A stretch of 64,000 nt of DNA from Ostrea edulis (lineage: Eukaryota): contig NC_079164.1 in assembly GCF_947568905.1 (NCBI RefSeq), positions 108,996,001 to 109,060,000 of the forward strand, read 5' to 3'. This document shows positions 4,364 to 10,000 of this stretch, piece by piece. Numbering within the stretch: position 1 is the first letter of the stretch; every line of letters starts with the position of its first letter. A program made the translations under genes and the position numbers. A model generated the notes under the pieces. It was not told the origin of the DNA. It was given only the letters and a program-made list of their open reading frames with translations, and ran no database searches.

Positions 4364-4939
4364 ATGGTCACAGTATTTACTGAGGAAGAAAACAGATTAA
4401 TTGGAATGATTTCATAAACTTTTCACATTAAGAGGGACGTGCGAAATTGTGATTAAGATTGGCATAATCTCAATACGACCAGGTCATGTGACCTAAAATA
4501 AGTTGAAATAATCTTTGTTAACAATAGCGACATCAAGCAGAATGGTATACTAGTATGCTCGTACATGTATAATTAGAGAAAATTGGTAACAATGACCGGT
4601 CATTGTTTTTTGCTATGAAAATAGTATATGAAAATCATGGAAATACCATTATTGAAACCATTGTCCTAATATTTCTATAGCAATGAAAACCTAGCGCAAC
4701 TACGATGTATCCATACCAAAGTCCTACCGGTATTCCTTCTTGTAATCAAAGTCTAATAAATAAACACATTTCCGTTTCATGAATTTGTATTTATACTAGA
4801 TATCTCAAACTCAACATAGTTTTAGTCATGTGACAATGTTCATCAAGCTATATCTACTGTAGCGGACAGTGTAAGAGGGAACTTATACTGCCTCGCTAGA
4901 GAGCTAGCTTTTCTAATGATGTGGTCGAGTCTCTCTCTT

Positions 4940-4993
4940 GATCACGCAAGTTAAGCAACCTCGAGCGTGATCAACACTTGGCTGTGTGACCGC
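4940..4993 (+). promoter_or_regulatory. 5S rRNA-derived internal Pol III promoter (A box, intermediate element, C box) in 5' LTR
   Basis: GATCACGCAAGTTAAGCAACCTCGAGCGTGATCAACACTTGGCTGTGTGACCGC aligns without gaps to the central part of metazoan 5S rRNA (GATC..GAAG.TAAGCA...TCGGGC..G.TTAGTACTTGGATGGG.GACCGC). Confidence 0.8.
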
Positions 4994-5273
4994 TACATGT
5001 TACAAATTGGTGGCAGCGTAGTAACTCCGGCGTTTGGCGGGAGGCCTGCTTCAGGTAGTCTCTTCGGAGTTCTGGGTACAAATGTGGATTCGTCTGGGGG
5101 TCGTCGAGAACGGCGTTGCTGAGCAGGTGTCAAACACTTAGAGAGAACTCACGCTAAGCTTCCGGACGAAGCTTCCCCTAGTGGGGGGAAGCGTAACTGA
5201 CGGTATAAGAGGGAACTTATACTGCCTCGCTAGAGAGCTAGCTTTTCTAGTGATGTGGTAGAGTCTCTCTCTT

Positions 5274-5327
5274 GATCACGCAAGTTAAGTAACGGCGAGT
5301 GTGATCAGCACTTGGCTGGGTGACCGG
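5274..5327 (+). promoter_or_regulatory. 5S rRNA-derived internal Pol III promoter in 3' LTR
   Basis: Second copy; its C-box region GTGATCAGCACTTGGCTGGGTGACCG is closer to 5S rRNA than the 5' LTR copy. Confidence 0.8.
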
Positions 5328-6307
5328 TACACGTTACACTACGCAGTGACGGGTGAAATTTGAGGTTCTTTCCTAAATGTTTTGTATTGATTGTGTAGCT
5401 ATCTTCAGGACACCAACAGTCGGTGGTTGATGACCTTCAGCGATCACGCAAGAAGTCACATATGAGTGCCAAGCAACATATTGGATATTTTACGGATAAA
5501 AGCCACGTTGGTATGGTAGACCATGCATCATAACATGCAACATTGGTCACCATTGCAGTCGGCAATGAAATAAAATAGACGCAAAATTTTAATGTGAAAT
5601 ATTCAAAGCAATGCCTTTTGTCCCAGTTTTGATATTTCGTGAAATGTTTGTCGTATCTAACATTTCAGTTAAACATGCAGTCGATAGTTCTAGACACCAC
5701 ACATGGCATCGTGGATACTTTTGATAAAGCTCTATGGCGTAGCGAATCACCAGCGAGTTTTATATGCTCTAATATTTTAGTGATCTGCTGGCATGGCATA
5801 CGTAGTGCATATATGTAGCAATTGAAGACTGACAAGATGATTTCCCGGTAATGAATTGTACCGTGGTATGAAATTGGAAGAAAGAACATGCGCATATCCA
5901 CGTGCATCAAAACAATTTGCATATAGAAGTCCACGTCTTAATTCAGAGTGTTTTATCAATGAAAACGTCTCACATGCTCCAACAAGTTTATCTTTTTTTG
6001 TTTTATGTAGCTTATTCCAGATAGAGATAAAACTATCGAGAAATTACGCCGTTTTATTACACAAAAGATAGAAAATGTTCGTCAAATCAGTAGACAAATA
6101 CACAGTTCTATATTCACCTATGAAATGGCAATTTTACGATTTTTTGTAAAAACATGTTTTCAAGTGGTTCTAAATTCACGGTTTTTATGTCCAGTCTTTA
6201 TAGATATATGTATCAAATGTTGCTTGTTTTTACTGATTTACTCCATAGCTAAATGAGCGAAAATTAGATGAATTAAAAATAAAGCTGAATACAGTATAAT
6301 AAACAAA

Positions 6308-7015: not shown

Positions 7016-10000
7016 TTACCAATCTACAAAGAGAAAAATGAAGAGAAAATTACATTATTATAGATTCTAACAAATTAAAGTACGTTTAAGTTCATAAAAG
7101 AAAAGCAAGGATACTTACATTTGATTTTAGAACCTGAAATGTAAATGTAGTTTATGAGAGTACTTTTAAAAAAAATTATATTAAAAAAATTACAGATGAA
7201 ATCTTTTCAAATAGTATTTTCACTAAAAAGTTTCCAAAATTTACCTGCATTATTTCTATTGCGCATCATTCCTCCCATTCCCATCATCCCTGTACCCATA
7301 CCAGATGGCATCATCATTTCAGCGGCTGGCATCATCATTTTTGCAGATGGCATCATCATTTTTGCAGGTGGCATCATCATCATTTCTTGGGCTGGCATCA
7401 TCATTTTTGCAGGTGGCATCATCATTCCTGGGGCTGACATCATCATATTTGCTTGTGGCATCATCATCATTCCTGGGGCTGGCATCATCATATTTGCAGT
7501 TGGCATCATCATTTTGGGTGTAGGTGCCATCATTGAACCTTTATTGCCTGCGTTCATTCCTCCCATCCCACTCATCATAGAAGCAGCTGCCATCATCATA
7601 CCCATATCCATAGGTGACATCGCCATTCCTCCCATACCACCCATTCCTCCCATACCACCCATTCCTCCCATACCACCCATGCTTGGTTTCATCATTTTTC
7701 CTCCTCCCATACCAGGACCCATGATCATCATATCAGCAGCGCCAGCGCCACTTCCTCCAGATGACATAACTGCACCATTTGAACCTCCTCCTACCATAAC
7801 CATCATTTTAGGCCCAGCACTACCAGCTCCAGCAGCTGCTACACCTTCTATTTCACCACCTTCAATTTCTCCAGGCTGTGGAGCCTCTGTTGGCTGAGGT
7901 GGAGATGGCATCGCTGCTTCACCTCCCTTTGCACCACCCATGGCAGCACCCATACCGCCATTCATACCGGCGCCCATACCGCTATTCATACCAGCACCCA
8001 TTTTACCTCCAGACTGCATAGGCACAGGCATCATGCCCTCAGCAGGTGGCATCATACCCGCTGGCATCATACCTGCTGGCATCATTCCCTCAGCTTCTGG
8101 CATTTTTCCTCCAGCTGGCATCATTCCTCCAGCTGGCATCATTCCTCCAGCTGGCATCATTCCTCTTCCTCCCGCTGGCATCATTCCTCCAGCTGGCATC
8201 ATTCCTCCAGCTGACATCTTTCCTCCAGCTCGCATCATTCCTCCACCTGGCATCATTCCTCCAGCTGGCATCATTCCTCCACCTGGCATCATTCCTCCAG
8301 CTGGCATCATTCCTCCACCTGGCATCATTCCTCCACCAGGCATATTTCCTCCTGCTGGCATCATTCCTCCACCTGACATACCTGCTGGCATTCCGTTAGA
8401 CGGCATTCCAGGTTCAGGTGCTGGCATCGGGGCTCCTGTCATCATACCAAGTGAAGAAGGAGCTGGTATCATAGAACCGGGCATCATTCCAGGGGCAGGC
8501 GCAGACATCATAGAACCAGGCATTCCAGGTGCCGGTTCAGGTGCTGGCATCATACCATTAGGCATCATTCCAGGTGAGGAAGGCATCATTCCAGGTGAGG
8601 GAAGCATCATTGAACCAGGCATCCTTCCAGGGACAGGTTCAGGCATTGGGGCTCCTGGCATCATACCAGGTGATGAAGGTGCTGGCATCATTGCATTAGA
8701 CATCATTCTAGGGGCTGGAGCAGATGCTGGCATCATAGCATTAGGCATCATACCAGGTGATGAAGGCGCTGGCATCATAGAACCGGGCATCATTCCAGGG
8801 GCAGGCGCAGACATCATAGAACCAGGCATTCCAGGTGCCGGTTCAGGTGCTGGCATCATACCATTAGGCATCATTCCAGATGAGGAAGGCATCATTCCAG
8901 GTGAGGGAAGCATCATAGAACCAGGCATCCTTCCAGGGGCAGGTTCAGGCATTGGAGCTCCTGGCATCATATCAGGCGATGAAGGTGCTGGCATCATGAC
9001 ATTAGACATCATACCATTAGGCATCATACCAGGTGATGAAGGTGCTGGCATCATACCATTAGGCATCATTCCAGGGGCAGGTTCAGGCATTGGAGCTCCT
9101 GGCATCATACCAGGCGATGAAGGTGCTGGCATCATACCATTAGGCATCATACCAGGAGAAGAAGGCGCTGGCATCATACCATTAGGCATCCTTCCAGGAG
9201 CAGGTTCAGGTGCCGGTGCCATGGGTCCTGGCATACCTTGTATCATCGTATTAGGCATCATTTCCGGGGCTGGGGCAGGCGCCATACCCATCATTCCCAT
9301 TATGTTTCCGCCTGGCATACCATTTCCTGGCATACCCATCATTCCCATCATGTTTCCGCCTGGCATACCATTGCCTGGCATACCATTTCCTGGCATACCC
9401 ATCATGTTTCCGCCTGGCATACCCTTGCCTGGCATACCATTTCCTGGCATACCCATCATGTTTCCGCCTGGCATACCCTTGCCTGGCATACCATTTCCTG
9501 GCATACCCATCATGTTTCCGCCTGGCATACCCTTGCCTGGCATACCATTTCCTGGCATACCCATCATGTTTCCGCCTGGCATACTCTTGCCTGGCATACC
9601 ATTTCCTGGCATACCCATCATGTTTCCGCCTGGCATACCATTGCCTGGCATACCATTTCCCGGCATTCCCATCATGTTTCCGCCTGGCATACCATTGCCT
9701 GGCATACCATTAGGTCTATTGCCTCTCCCTCGCCCTTAAAGAGAAATATAAGTAACGTTTATTTACACAAATTGGACATATTATGCCATTCTATAGCTCA
9801 TATATTGGCGTAATTGTCATTAGTGTGGAGGGAGGGAACCAGATTACCCGTAGTATGCGATCTTTCTTAGTCCATTGGTTGAAACTGGGTCACAATGCTC
9901 AGTTTTATCTGTTTGATCATATATGTTTGCATGAATCTTTAATGACTAAATGATGGATTAATTCGTGTTTTATTAAAGCAGTGCAACTTATCAACACATC

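What the first reader, a model, noticed from the sequence alone, without database searches (positions are those of the whole stretch)
4858..5338. Complete TRIM with 5S rRNA-derived Pol III promoter in both LTRs (Cassandra/Ajax-like) in a mollusc
Seen in sequence: two 147-bp LTRs about 90% identical, a PBS complementary to the 3' end of tRNA-Leu (TGGTGGCAGCG), a PPT, a 4-bp TSD CTAC, a 187-bp non-coding interior, and a gapless 54-nt match in each LTR to the A box/IE/C box part of 5S rRNA. Established knowledge as recalled: 5S-bearing TRIMs are plant Cassandra and nemertean Ajax (5-bp TSD); animal Helenus TRIMs have 4-bp TSDs but tRNA-like LTRs. Inference: a 5S-LTR TRIM with a 4-bp TSD and Leu PBS, probably mobilised by Gypsy elements, may be an undescribed independent lineage in bivalves.
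Basis: partly seen in the sequence, partly recalled or inferred. Interest (0 to 1): 0.85.

Follow-up and report, generated by a model that had tools for sequence, protein, structure and literature searches.

The report
Oyster mini-retrotransposon carrying 5S promoter
This is an old, decayed copy of a small non-coding LTR retrotransposon family of an oyster genome whose terminal repeats carry the internal-promoter part of the 5S ribosomal RNA gene. Such elements were known only from plants and ribbon worms, so it is a new member of a known kind, not a new kind.

Summary
There are two 147-nt LTRs (89.8% identical), TG..CA ends, a CTAC target duplication, an 11-nt tRNA-Leu primer site, a purine tract and a 187-nt non-coding interior. 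Each LTR has a gapless 53-54-nt match (44/54) to positions 41-94 of the host's own 5S gene (z = 23.7). Rfam's 5S model is silent because only the promoter part is present.

The family is real and multi-copy. Its 34-nt 5S-like core occurs 490 times, 11 of 17 other full copies have 4-bp duplications, and some copies have identical LTRs. Other copies carry a 20-nt tRNA-Leu site, and one fossil copied 47 nt of the mature tRNA-Leu.

A 7.5-kb Ty3/Gypsy family is a credible helper. It shares the tRNA-Leu site, the 4-bp duplications, the last 10 LTR bases and a GGA-loop hairpin at the same distance from the 3' LTR.

Pol III transcription is inferred, not shown; no RNA data were usable. Whether the family is independent of nemertean Ajax cannot be decided.

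I found no description in the searchable literature, and Repbase and Dfam could not be checked. The scan had already noted this family four times elsewhere in this genome.

Verdict: new member of a known kind, with moderate interest.

The parts
4854..4857 (+). Left copy of the 4-bp target-site duplication, CTAC
   Evidence: Read; identical to 5339-5342. 4-bp TSDs are seen in 11 of 17 other full copies.
4858..5004 (+). 5' LTR, 147 nt, TG..CA
   Evidence: homologous to about 490 LTRs genome-wide.
4900..4900 (+). Predicted Pol III start (equivalent of 5S position 1, LTR position 43). This is an inference only.
   Evidence: Register of the gapless 5S alignment. No RNA data were available.
4909..4912 (+). 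TTTT run (LTR positions 52-55), 10-13 nt downstream of the predicted start. It is a candidate Pol III terminator that would define a short R when read in the 3' LTR.
   Evidence: kept in about 90% of copies and in the metagenome relative L134. The host 5S genes end in T runs.
4940..4993 (+). 5S rRNA-derived segment (5S positions 41-94). A-box equivalent 4949-4963, IE 4966-4971, C box 4979-4996.
   Evidence: 44/54 identical to the host 5S gene, gapless, z = 23.7. A box 14/15, IE 4/6 and C box 13/18 identical, counted by eye from the alignment.
5005..5191 (+). Non-coding interior, 187 nt; a decayed version of a 208-nt highly structured interior
   Evidence: Alignment of copies shows 13-nt and 7-nt deletions here. 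The fold z-score is -1.05 here against -5.07 in young copy L002.
5008..5018 (+). Primer-binding site, 11 nt complementary to the 3' end (with CCA) of tRNA-Leu(AAG/TAG)
   Evidence: Host tRNA-Leu genes end ..CCCACCGCTGCCA. Other copies have the full 20-nt site. Fossil L053 copied 47 nt of the tRNA.
5057..5069 (+). AGTCTCTTCGGAG, a 13-nt exact sense copy of the variable arm of host tRNA-Leu; meaning unknown
   Evidence: The local alignment of the interior to the tRNA is reached by 12 of 1000 shuffles.
5156..5174 (+). Hairpin just upstream of the PPT (AAGCTTC-CGGAC-GAAGCTT here; AGCTTCG-GGA-CGAAGCT in young copies), preceded by CGCTAAG
   Evidence: The same hairpin position and GGA loop occur in the Gypsy candidate. 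The motif is shared with the Ajax consensus interiors.
5180..5191 (+). Polypurine tract, AGTGGGGGGAAG
   Evidence: conserved in copies.
5192..5338 (+). 3' LTR, 147 nt (5S-derived segment 5274-5326, TTTT 5243-5246)
5339..5342 (+). Right copy of the target-site duplication, CTAC

Best explanation
Shown: window 4858-5338 is one old, inactive insertion of a multi-copy, non-autonomous LTR retrotransposon (a TRIM) of an oyster genome. Its LTRs contain positions 41-94 of a 5S rRNA gene, which is the internal control region (A box, intermediate element, C box), in sense orientation and ending about 11 nt before the LTR end. The family replicates like any LTR element. Mature tRNA-Leu primes minus-strand synthesis at the PBS, the purine tract primes the plus strand, and integration makes 4-bp duplications. 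Inferred: the proteins come from a Ty3/Gypsy clade in the same genome. That clade shares the primer, the TSD length, the last 10 bases of the LTR and a GGA-loop hairpin at the same distance upstream of the 3' LTR. Also inferred, by analogy with 5S genes, SINE3, Cassandra and Ajax: TFIIIA/TFIIIC/TFIIIB bind the 5S part of the 5' LTR and start Pol III about 50 nt upstream of the A box, near LTR position 43. The RNA therefore carries its own promoter. It runs through the interior and ends at the TTTT run (LTR 52-55) of the 3' LTR. This leaves a terminal redundancy (R) of roughly 13 nt for the first strand transfer. The same T run in the 5' LTR would have to be read through.
For: Structure and 5S homology. 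Family size and activity: 1274 first-look candidates; 490 occurrences of the 34-nt core at <=3 mismatches against 0 for the reversed control; LTR pairs 100% and 99.3% identical in L002 and L003; 4-bp TSDs in 11 of 17 further full copies. Primer: host tRNA-Leu genes; the 20-nt PBS in L043, L046, L051, L055 and L064; L053, an LTR plus a 47-nt copy of tRNA-Leu including CCA that stops before tRNA position 37. Helper: a family about 7.5 kb long with 543-nt LTRs, LTR pairs 97-99% identical, a tRNA-Leu PBS, 4-bp TSDs in 4 of 5 pairs, and Integrase_p58_C plus Tf2-type SH3 domains. The 45 nt before its 3' LTR are 23/45 identical to the TRIM in the same register (1 of 5000 shuffles reaches this). The predicted structure is identical there, and three stem pairs are changed on both sides. 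Promoter role: the match is gapless, so box spacing is that of a 5S gene. Across three lineages (L002 and metagenome relatives L134 and L096), the 5S part (0.85; C box 0.90) and the LTR ends are better kept than LTR 43-82 (0.68). No poly(A) signal was seen in the LTR by eye. Ajax and Cassandra are built alike.
Against: No transcript evidence. No run on record as RNA holds the element, and the contigs laid cannot show starts or ends. Rfam's 5S model gives nothing. The IE equivalent has 2 of 6 changes. A TTTT only 10-13 nt after the predicted start could abort transcription. Within the young family the whole LTR is evenly conserved, so there is no selective signal at that depth. LTR 1-42, which is not 5S-derived, is as well kept as the 5S part. 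The helper assignment is circumstantial: the 5' LTR ends share only TGTA, and several Gypsy families here use tRNA-Leu and end in CACGTTACA.
Confidence: 0.72

Rival explanations
1. The 5S-like segment is a passenger. It would be a relic of template switching onto 5S rRNA, or of a 5S-derived SINE insertion into an ancestral LTR, with no promoter role. The element would then be transcribed by Pol II from the conserved first 42 nt of the LTR, or by read-through from host genes.
For: LTR 1-42 is as conserved as the 5S part across three lineages. Contigs of possible RNA runs join the element to unrelated flanking sequence (records 1 and 2). The IE is imperfect, and a TTTT run sits close to the predicted Pol III start.
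Against: The segment covers just the three control elements with 5S spacing and no indel. The same partial 5S segment at the same place in the LTR is found in Ajax, and 5S boxes occur in Cassandra LTRs. No poly(A) signal was seen in the LTR. The runs are only guessed to be RNA.
Confidence: 0.2
2. The oyster family belongs to the same lineage as nemertean Ajax. It would share an ancestor, or have arrived by horizontal transfer of the TRIM together with its Gypsy helper clade, rather than by an independent capture of 5S.
For: Both are assigned tRNA-Leu. Both carry only the A box-IE-C box part, ending 11-13 nt before the LTR end, with a T run about 10 nt after the predicted start (read by eye from the supplement). 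The interior motif CGCTAAG N2-6 TCG N0-1 GGACGA, followed by the closing half of a hairpin and then the PPT, fits both Ajax consensus sequences. It is found in 11 oyster loci, with 0 expected in shuffles of the window.
Against: The oyster 5S part is closer to the host's own 5S (46/54) than to Ajax (about 78-80% over 46 nt, by eye). It also keeps 5S positions 41-48, which Ajax lacks. The states I first took as shared-derived (T73C, G71A) occur in genuine 5S genes of other marine organisms (L123). TSD length differs (4 against 5). The motif was defined after seeing both sequences. No formal alignment could be run because the Ajax sequences have no reference here.
Confidence: 0.4
3. It is a member of an already described bivalve TRIM group: Helenus (tRNA-like LTRs) or biv-TRIM.
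For: 4-bp TSDs and a Gypsy-type PBS, as in bivalve Helenus. The hosts are bivalves.
Against: No tRNA-like sequence is found in the LTR by ARAGORN or Rfam. Bivalve Helenus uses Lys, His, Ile, Pro, Glu or Ser, not Leu. biv-TRIM has 202-218-bp repeats, a 77-80-bp interior and a conserved TGATCCCAAAGGAC segment that is absent from all loci, and it was not detected in Ostrea edulis.
Confidence: 0.02
4. It is chance similarity, an assembly artefact, or a degraded 5S pseudogene pair rather than a mobile element.
For: Rfam's 5S model finds nothing.
Against: z = 23.7. There are hundreds of copies on all ten large contigs, each with its own TSD. The family also occurs in sequencing runs from other studies and in metagenome contigs.
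Confidence: 0.01

Closest known systems
Ajax (Ajax-1_NGe, Ajax-1_LiLo; Kojima 2024, PMC10886601)
   Same: A TRIM of 420-500 bp with LTRs of about 150 nt. The LTR carries only the A box-IE-C box part of 5S rRNA in sense orientation near its 3' end. The PBS is assigned to tRNA-Leu, and the host is a spiralian animal. A CGCTAAG-hairpin-PPT arrangement sits at the end of the interior (by eye; pattern test).
   Different: The host phylum is Mollusca, not Nemertea. TSDs are 4 bp, not 5 bp. The PBS is 11-20 nt and includes CCA, against 6 nt without CCA. The interior is longer (187-208 nt against 108-113 nt). The 5S part also keeps positions 41-48 and is closest to the host's own 5S.
Cassandra (plant TRIM; Kalendar et al. 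2008, 2020, PMC7215508)
   Same: 5S-derived A and C boxes, 18 nt apart, inside both LTRs of a non-coding TRIM. Tandem LTR-interior arrays occur in both (L022, L025).
   Different: Cassandra is in plants. It carries a fuller 5S domain with its own terminators, the tRNA-iMet PBS TGGTATCAGAGC, and a length of 565-860 bp. The plant box consensus sequences are not matched exactly.
Helenus of bivalves (Kojima 2024)
   Same: A TRIM with a Pol III-type promoter in its LTRs, 4-bp TSDs, a presumed Gypsy helper and oyster hosts.
   Different: Helenus LTRs are tRNA-like, not 5S-like, and none of the bivalve families uses tRNA-Leu.
biv-TRIM (Satovic et al. 2019, PMC6934838)
   Same: A TRIM of bivalves, with solo repeats and tandem arrays.
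   Different: It has 202-218-bp repeats, a 77-80-bp interior, no clear PBS and the PPT GGGGAGA. It has no 5S similarity and was not detected in Ostrea edulis.
SINE3 (5S-derived SINEs; Kapitonov and Jurka 2003)
   Same: Mobile elements that carry the 5S internal promoter in their own transcript.
   Different: SINE3 elements are non-LTR elements mobilised by LINEs, with no LTRs, PBS or PPT. None is reported from bivalves in the papers searched.

Membership tests
TRIM (terminal-repeat retrotransposon in miniature) | Two short direct terminal repeats with TG..CA ends, flanked by a target-site duplication | tested here: met
   147-nt LTRs; CTAC duplication; 4-bp TSDs in 11 of 17 other full copies.
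TRIM (terminal-repeat retrotransposon in miniature) | PBS and PPT bordering a short interior without gag or pol | tested here: met
   tRNA-Leu PBS, purine tract, and no ORF of 70 aa or more in the 187-nt interior.
Ajax / TRIMp3 with 5S promoter | Partial 5S rRNA-derived sequence (box A, IE, box C) in the LTR | tested here: met
   gapless match of 5S positions 41-94, 44/54 identical, z = 23.7, in both LTRs.
Ajax / TRIMp3 with 5S promoter | Sequence homology to the Ajax-1 consensus outside the 5S boxes | tested here: inconclusive
   A by-eye comparison with the paper's supplement and a pattern test show a shared pre-PPT motif and hairpin.
Ajax / TRIMp3 with 5S promoter | 5-bp TSD (as described for both Ajax families) | tested here: not met
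   4 bp. One copy, L005, fits 5 bp.
Ajax / TRIMp3 with 5S promoter | Transcription by RNA polymerase III from the LTR | not testable with these tools
   No run on record as RNA and contigs only. This is also untested for Ajax itself.
Cassandra | Box A RGTTAAGYRHGY and box C RRRATRGGTRACY, 18 nt apart | tested here: inconclusive
   The 18-nt spacing is met. The plant consensus is not met exactly: box A is AGTTAAGCAACC, mismatching at the 11th base (C for G) in the window copy and at the 11th and 12th in young copies (AGTTAAGCAACG); box C matches 11/13. The boxes follow the host animal's 5S instead. Counted by eye.
Cassandra | tRNA-iMet PBS TGGTATCAGAGC | tested here: not met
   the PBS is TGGTGGCAGCG (tRNA-Leu).
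Helenus | tRNA-like sequence inside the LTR | tested here: not met
   ARAGORN finds none. Rfam gives no tRNA match at E <= 10.
biv-TRIM | 202-218-bp repeats, 77-80-bp interior with a conserved TGATCCCAAAGGAC segment | tested here: not met

The most novel reading that the evidence does not exclude
Ajax-type 5S TRIMs may be an old spiralian lineage, or one spread by transfer, that co-evolves with a single Ty3/Gypsy clade. That clade would be marked by a GGA-loop hairpin 25 nt upstream of the 3' LTR and by tRNA-Leu priming. The life cycle would be fully adapted to Pol III: the start is set by the 5S control region in U5, and a T4 run 10-13 nt downstream serves as the terminator in the 3' LTR. The terminal redundancy would then be only about 13 nt. 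The sense copy of the tRNA-Leu variable arm in the interior would be a primer mimic.
Probability: 0.25. Interest if true: 0.65.

Novelty: new member of a known kind. Interest (0 to 1): 0.5.

Why it matters
LTR elements that run on a borrowed Pol III promoter are rare. Cassandra in plants is the only validated case, and Ajax in two ribbon worms is the only animal case with a 5S promoter. An abundant, recently active family in a farmed oyster adds a second animal phylum. It also offers a plausible helper family and a replication fossil that names the primer. This gives a tractable system for two open questions: whether Pol III really makes the genomic RNA of such elements, and how a terminator inside the LTR is read through once and obeyed once. 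In practice, about 500 or more dispersed 5S-like promoter fragments will confuse 5S rDNA annotation and probe design in oysters.

Tried and rejected
1. Rfam cmscan for 5S on the window copy and on a young copy gave nothing at E <= 10. I take this as the effect of a partial 5S, not as absence.

2. RNA evidence: no run on record as RNA holds the element, and the four runs laid are contigs that cannot show starts, ends or strand. This is no evidence either way.

3. Conservation profile within 18 close copies: flat at about 94% everywhere, so uninformative.

4. Covariation in the interior among 22 copies: 14 two-sided and 97 one-sided changes against 131 broken cells. This is what decaying copies give and is not a test of structure.

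5. Empty-site search with the left flank: the flank is unique in the genome, so there is no paralogous empty site.

I worked instead with the 3.5-kb loci that the genome search still returned.

7. Formal alignment with the Ajax consensus sequences was not run. They exist only as text in a paper's supplement and have no reference here, so the comparison is by eye plus one short pattern.

8. First metagenome pattern: no match. The second gave 77 contigs, nearly all genuine 5S genes. This made me drop the argument that T73C and G71A are derived states shared with Ajax.

9. I built no consensus of the TRIM or of the Gypsy family. All comparisons use individual copies.

10. Pfam on the large ORFs 2-5 kb downstream found nothing. 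They are in-frame tandem repeats, unrelated to the element.
Full report
**What is in the window**

- The two 147-nt LTRs are at 4858-5004 and 5192-5338. They differ at 15 positions (89.8% identity, K2P 0.11; nine transitions, seven differences at CpG sites).
- The LTRs begin TG and end CA. The 3' LTR now begins CG.
- CTAC flanks the element on both sides (4854-4857, 5339-5342).
- After the 5' LTR comes AAT and then TGGTGGCAGCG.
- Before the 3' LTR lies AGTGGGGGGAAG.
- The 187-nt interior has no ORF of 70 aa or more.

**The 5S claim**

Rfam's covariance model gives no 5S match at E <= 10, on the window copy or on a young copy. I therefore fetched the genome's own 5S genes (full-length, 118.8 bits) and aligned one to the LTR.
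- The match is gapless: 5S positions 41-94 against LTR positions 83-136, 44/54 identical in the 5' LTR and 43/53 in the 3' LTR.
- The best-diagonal score is 34, against 7.65 +/- 1.11 (maximum 15) in 1000 dinucleotide-preserving shuffles (z = 23.7).
- blastn gives E = 5e-10 against the whole window. The opposite strand scores 8.
- With Xenopus numbering, which this 5S shares, the segment covers the A box (14/15 identical), the intermediate element (4/6) and most of the C box (13/18), with the 5S spacing intact.
- Nothing convincing remains of 5S positions 1-40 or 95-119. That explains the silence of the structure-based model and means no 5S-like RNA is encoded.

**It is a family, and recently active**

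- The 481-bp element finds 1274 first-look candidates in the 895-Mb assembly, and the 40 that were scored all match.
- The 34-nt 5S-like core of young copies occurs 490 times at <=3 mismatches (52 exact). The reversed control occurs 0 times.
- Among 17 further full-length copies, 11 have perfect 4-bp TSDs of unrelated sequence and two more match 3 of 4. Two without a TSD sit in LTR-interior-LTR arrays. One fits 5 bp.
- LTR pairs range from 79% to 100% identical. L002 is 100% and L003 is 99.3%.
- The window copy is an old one. Against the family it has lost 13 nt and 7 nt from two interior hairpins.
- Its interior no longer folds better than shuffles (z = -1.05). The interior of L002 gives -98.1 kcal/mol, z = -5.07.

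**The primer**

- The genome holds at least 20 places ending GGTTCGAATCCCACCGCTGCCA. ARAGORN calls tRNA-Leu(AAG) at each of the three places checked, and a tRNA-Leu(TAG) gene with the same 3' end lies beside one of them.
- The window's PBS matches 11 nt of the CCA-bearing 3' end. Other copies carry the full 20-nt site TGGTGGCAGCGGTGGGATTC after the same AAT spacer.
- One locus, L053, is an LTR followed by a 47-nt copy (45/47) of the tRNA's 3' part including CCA. The copy stops just before tRNA position 37 and is followed by an inverted copy of the LTR start.
- This agrees with an earlier follow-up note of this scan (s1-287395). I checked it myself, and it shows that mature tRNA-Leu really primed this family.

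**A candidate helper**

Searching for LTR end plus a long Leu PBS also returned autonomous elements. One family (L054, L066-L085) has these features:
- 543-nt LTRs that run TGTAATG...ACACGTTACA, and a length of about 7.5 kb.
- LTR pairs 97-99% identical and at least ten full copies.
- 4-bp TSDs in four of five LTR pairs and in two solo LTRs.
- A pol end with Integrase_p58_C and a Tf2-type SH3 domain, which are Ty3/Gypsy marks; a weak Retrotrans_gag hit; and an extra ORF with a C2H2 finger.

The last ten bases of its LTR equal those of young TRIM copies. The 5' ends share only TGTA.

The 45 nt upstream of the 3' LTR are 23/45 identical to the TRIM without gaps, and only 1 of 5000 shuffles reaches this. 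Both fold into a 7-bp stem with a GGA loop at exactly the same place, with three stem pairs changed on both sides. I read this as a shared cis-acting signal and as the best available evidence for who mobilises the TRIM. It remains circumstantial, because related Gypsy families here have similar ends.

**How it most likely works**

The 5S control region lies downstream of the point where a 5S gene would start, so the transcript would carry its own promoter, as SINEs do.
- By the register of the alignment, the start falls near LTR position 43 (window 4900).
- A TTTT run follows at LTR 52-55 and is kept in about 90% of copies and in relative L134. The host 5S genes end in T runs.
- If Pol III ends there in the 3' LTR, U3 is about 42 nt, R about 13 nt, and U5 92 nt. 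U5 would include the promoter.
- The cost is that the same run in the 5' LTR must be read through.
- Read by eye from the paper's supplement, Ajax has a T run at the same distance from its predicted start.
- In L021 both LTRs carry 3.5 tandem copies of LTR positions 1-57, and each unit ends just after the T run. This is a hint, not proof, that RNA ends lie there.

None of this could be tested. No run on record as RNA holds the element, and contigs say nothing about ends.

**Comparison with what is known**

Kojima 2024 (PMC10886601):
- It was found only in two nemerteans (421 and 434 bp, 5-bp TSD, a 6-nt tRNA-Leu PBS). The search was not systematic outside nemerteans.
- Bivalve TRIMs in that paper are Helenus, with tRNA-like LTRs, 4-bp TSDs and primers other than Leu.

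Other sources:
- biv-TRIM (PMC6934838) differs in every dimension, and its signature segment is absent here.
- A 2024 review of rDNA in transposons lists only Ajax and Cassandra as 5S TRIMs.
- Searches for 5S SINEs or 5S TRIMs in bivalves found none.

By the descriptive definition this family is Ajax-like. It differs in host phylum, TSD length, PBS quality and interior length.

**Independent or related to Ajax?**

- The 5S part of young copies is 46/54 identical to the host 5S, against about 78-80% to either Ajax consensus (by eye). This fits independent capture, or later tracking of the host promoter as described for Cassandra.
- States I first took for shared-derived changes occur in genuine 5S genes of marine organisms (L123), so I dropped that argument.
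- On the other side, the end of the interior shares CGCTAAG, a hairpin with TCG-(N)GGA-CGA at its top, and then the PPT. A pattern written to fit both Ajax consensus sequences hits 11 oyster loci, with none expected by chance.
- The pattern was made after seeing both sequences, and the hairpin is also in the Gypsy candidate. It may therefore reflect related helpers rather than related TRIMs.

I leave this open at about 40:60.

**Beyond this genome**

A marine-metagenome scan returned two solo LTRs homologous over their whole length. L134 is 87% and L096 is 72.5% identical to the L002 LTR. L134's flanks match this genome only as repeats about 80% identical, so it comes from another, related organism. 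Across these three lineages, LTR 1-42, the 5S part and the LTR end are best kept, and LTR 43-82 is least kept. Runs labelled with two other coded organisms also hold family pieces.

**Standing**

The scan had already flagged this family four times elsewhere in this genome.

This is a sound finding and a new member of a known kind. Its main value is as a system with a named primer, a candidate helper and a testable Pol III model.

Noticed in passing
window 5057-5069; L002 1702-1714; tRNA genes L038 1483-1495: The TRIM interior holds AGTCTCTTCGGAG, an exact 13-nt sense copy of the variable arm of the host tRNA-Leu that primes the element. It is kept in most copies and absent from the Gypsy candidate. 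A local alignment of the interior to tRNA positions 22-66 is reached by 12 of 1000 shuffles. It could be primer mimicry, a relic or chance.
   Followed up: partly
L053 about 1354-1570 (G000:C5, near 69,611,100): One LTR is followed by a 47-nt copy of mature tRNA-Leu (with CCA) that stops before tRNA position 37, then by an inverted copy of the LTR start. This is an integrated by-product of reverse transcription.
   Followed up: yes
L021 (G000:C7, 34,749,864-34,750,684): Both LTRs of this copy carry 3.5 tandem copies of LTR positions 1-57, separated by 4-nt linkers. Each unit ends just after the TTTT run.
   Followed up: partly
L046 oriented 1337-1412: A 76-nt near-perfect palindrome is inserted in a TRIM LTR exactly between positions 56 and 57, next to the T run.
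   Followed up: no
L066-L085; e.g. L067 691-1266: The roughly 7.5-kb Ty3/Gypsy family has an additional ORF of 190-230 aa with one C2H2 zinc finger between the integrase and the 3' LTR.
   Followed up: partly
L031 1501-1619 and 1998-2042 (G000:C6, about 5.73-5.75 Mb): 5S rRNA genes sit in a 1915-bp tandem unit that also contains a histone 3' stem-loop (Rfam RF00032, 37 bits). 5S and histone genes therefore seem to be linked in one repeat.
   Followed up: no
window 7154-9739: A 2.5-kb stretch of in-frame tandem repeats (periods 18, 21, 42, 54, 138 and 306 nt) is open on both strands (832 aa and 599 aa) with no Pfam match. It may be a repetitive, Met/Pro/Gly-rich structural protein gene.
   Followed up: partly
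L123 165-330 and about 70 other marine metagenome contigs (L087-L163): Genuine 5S genes of unidentified marine organisms carry C at position 73, and sometimes A at position 71. These are states that also occur in the Ajax and oyster TRIM promoters.
   Followed up: partly
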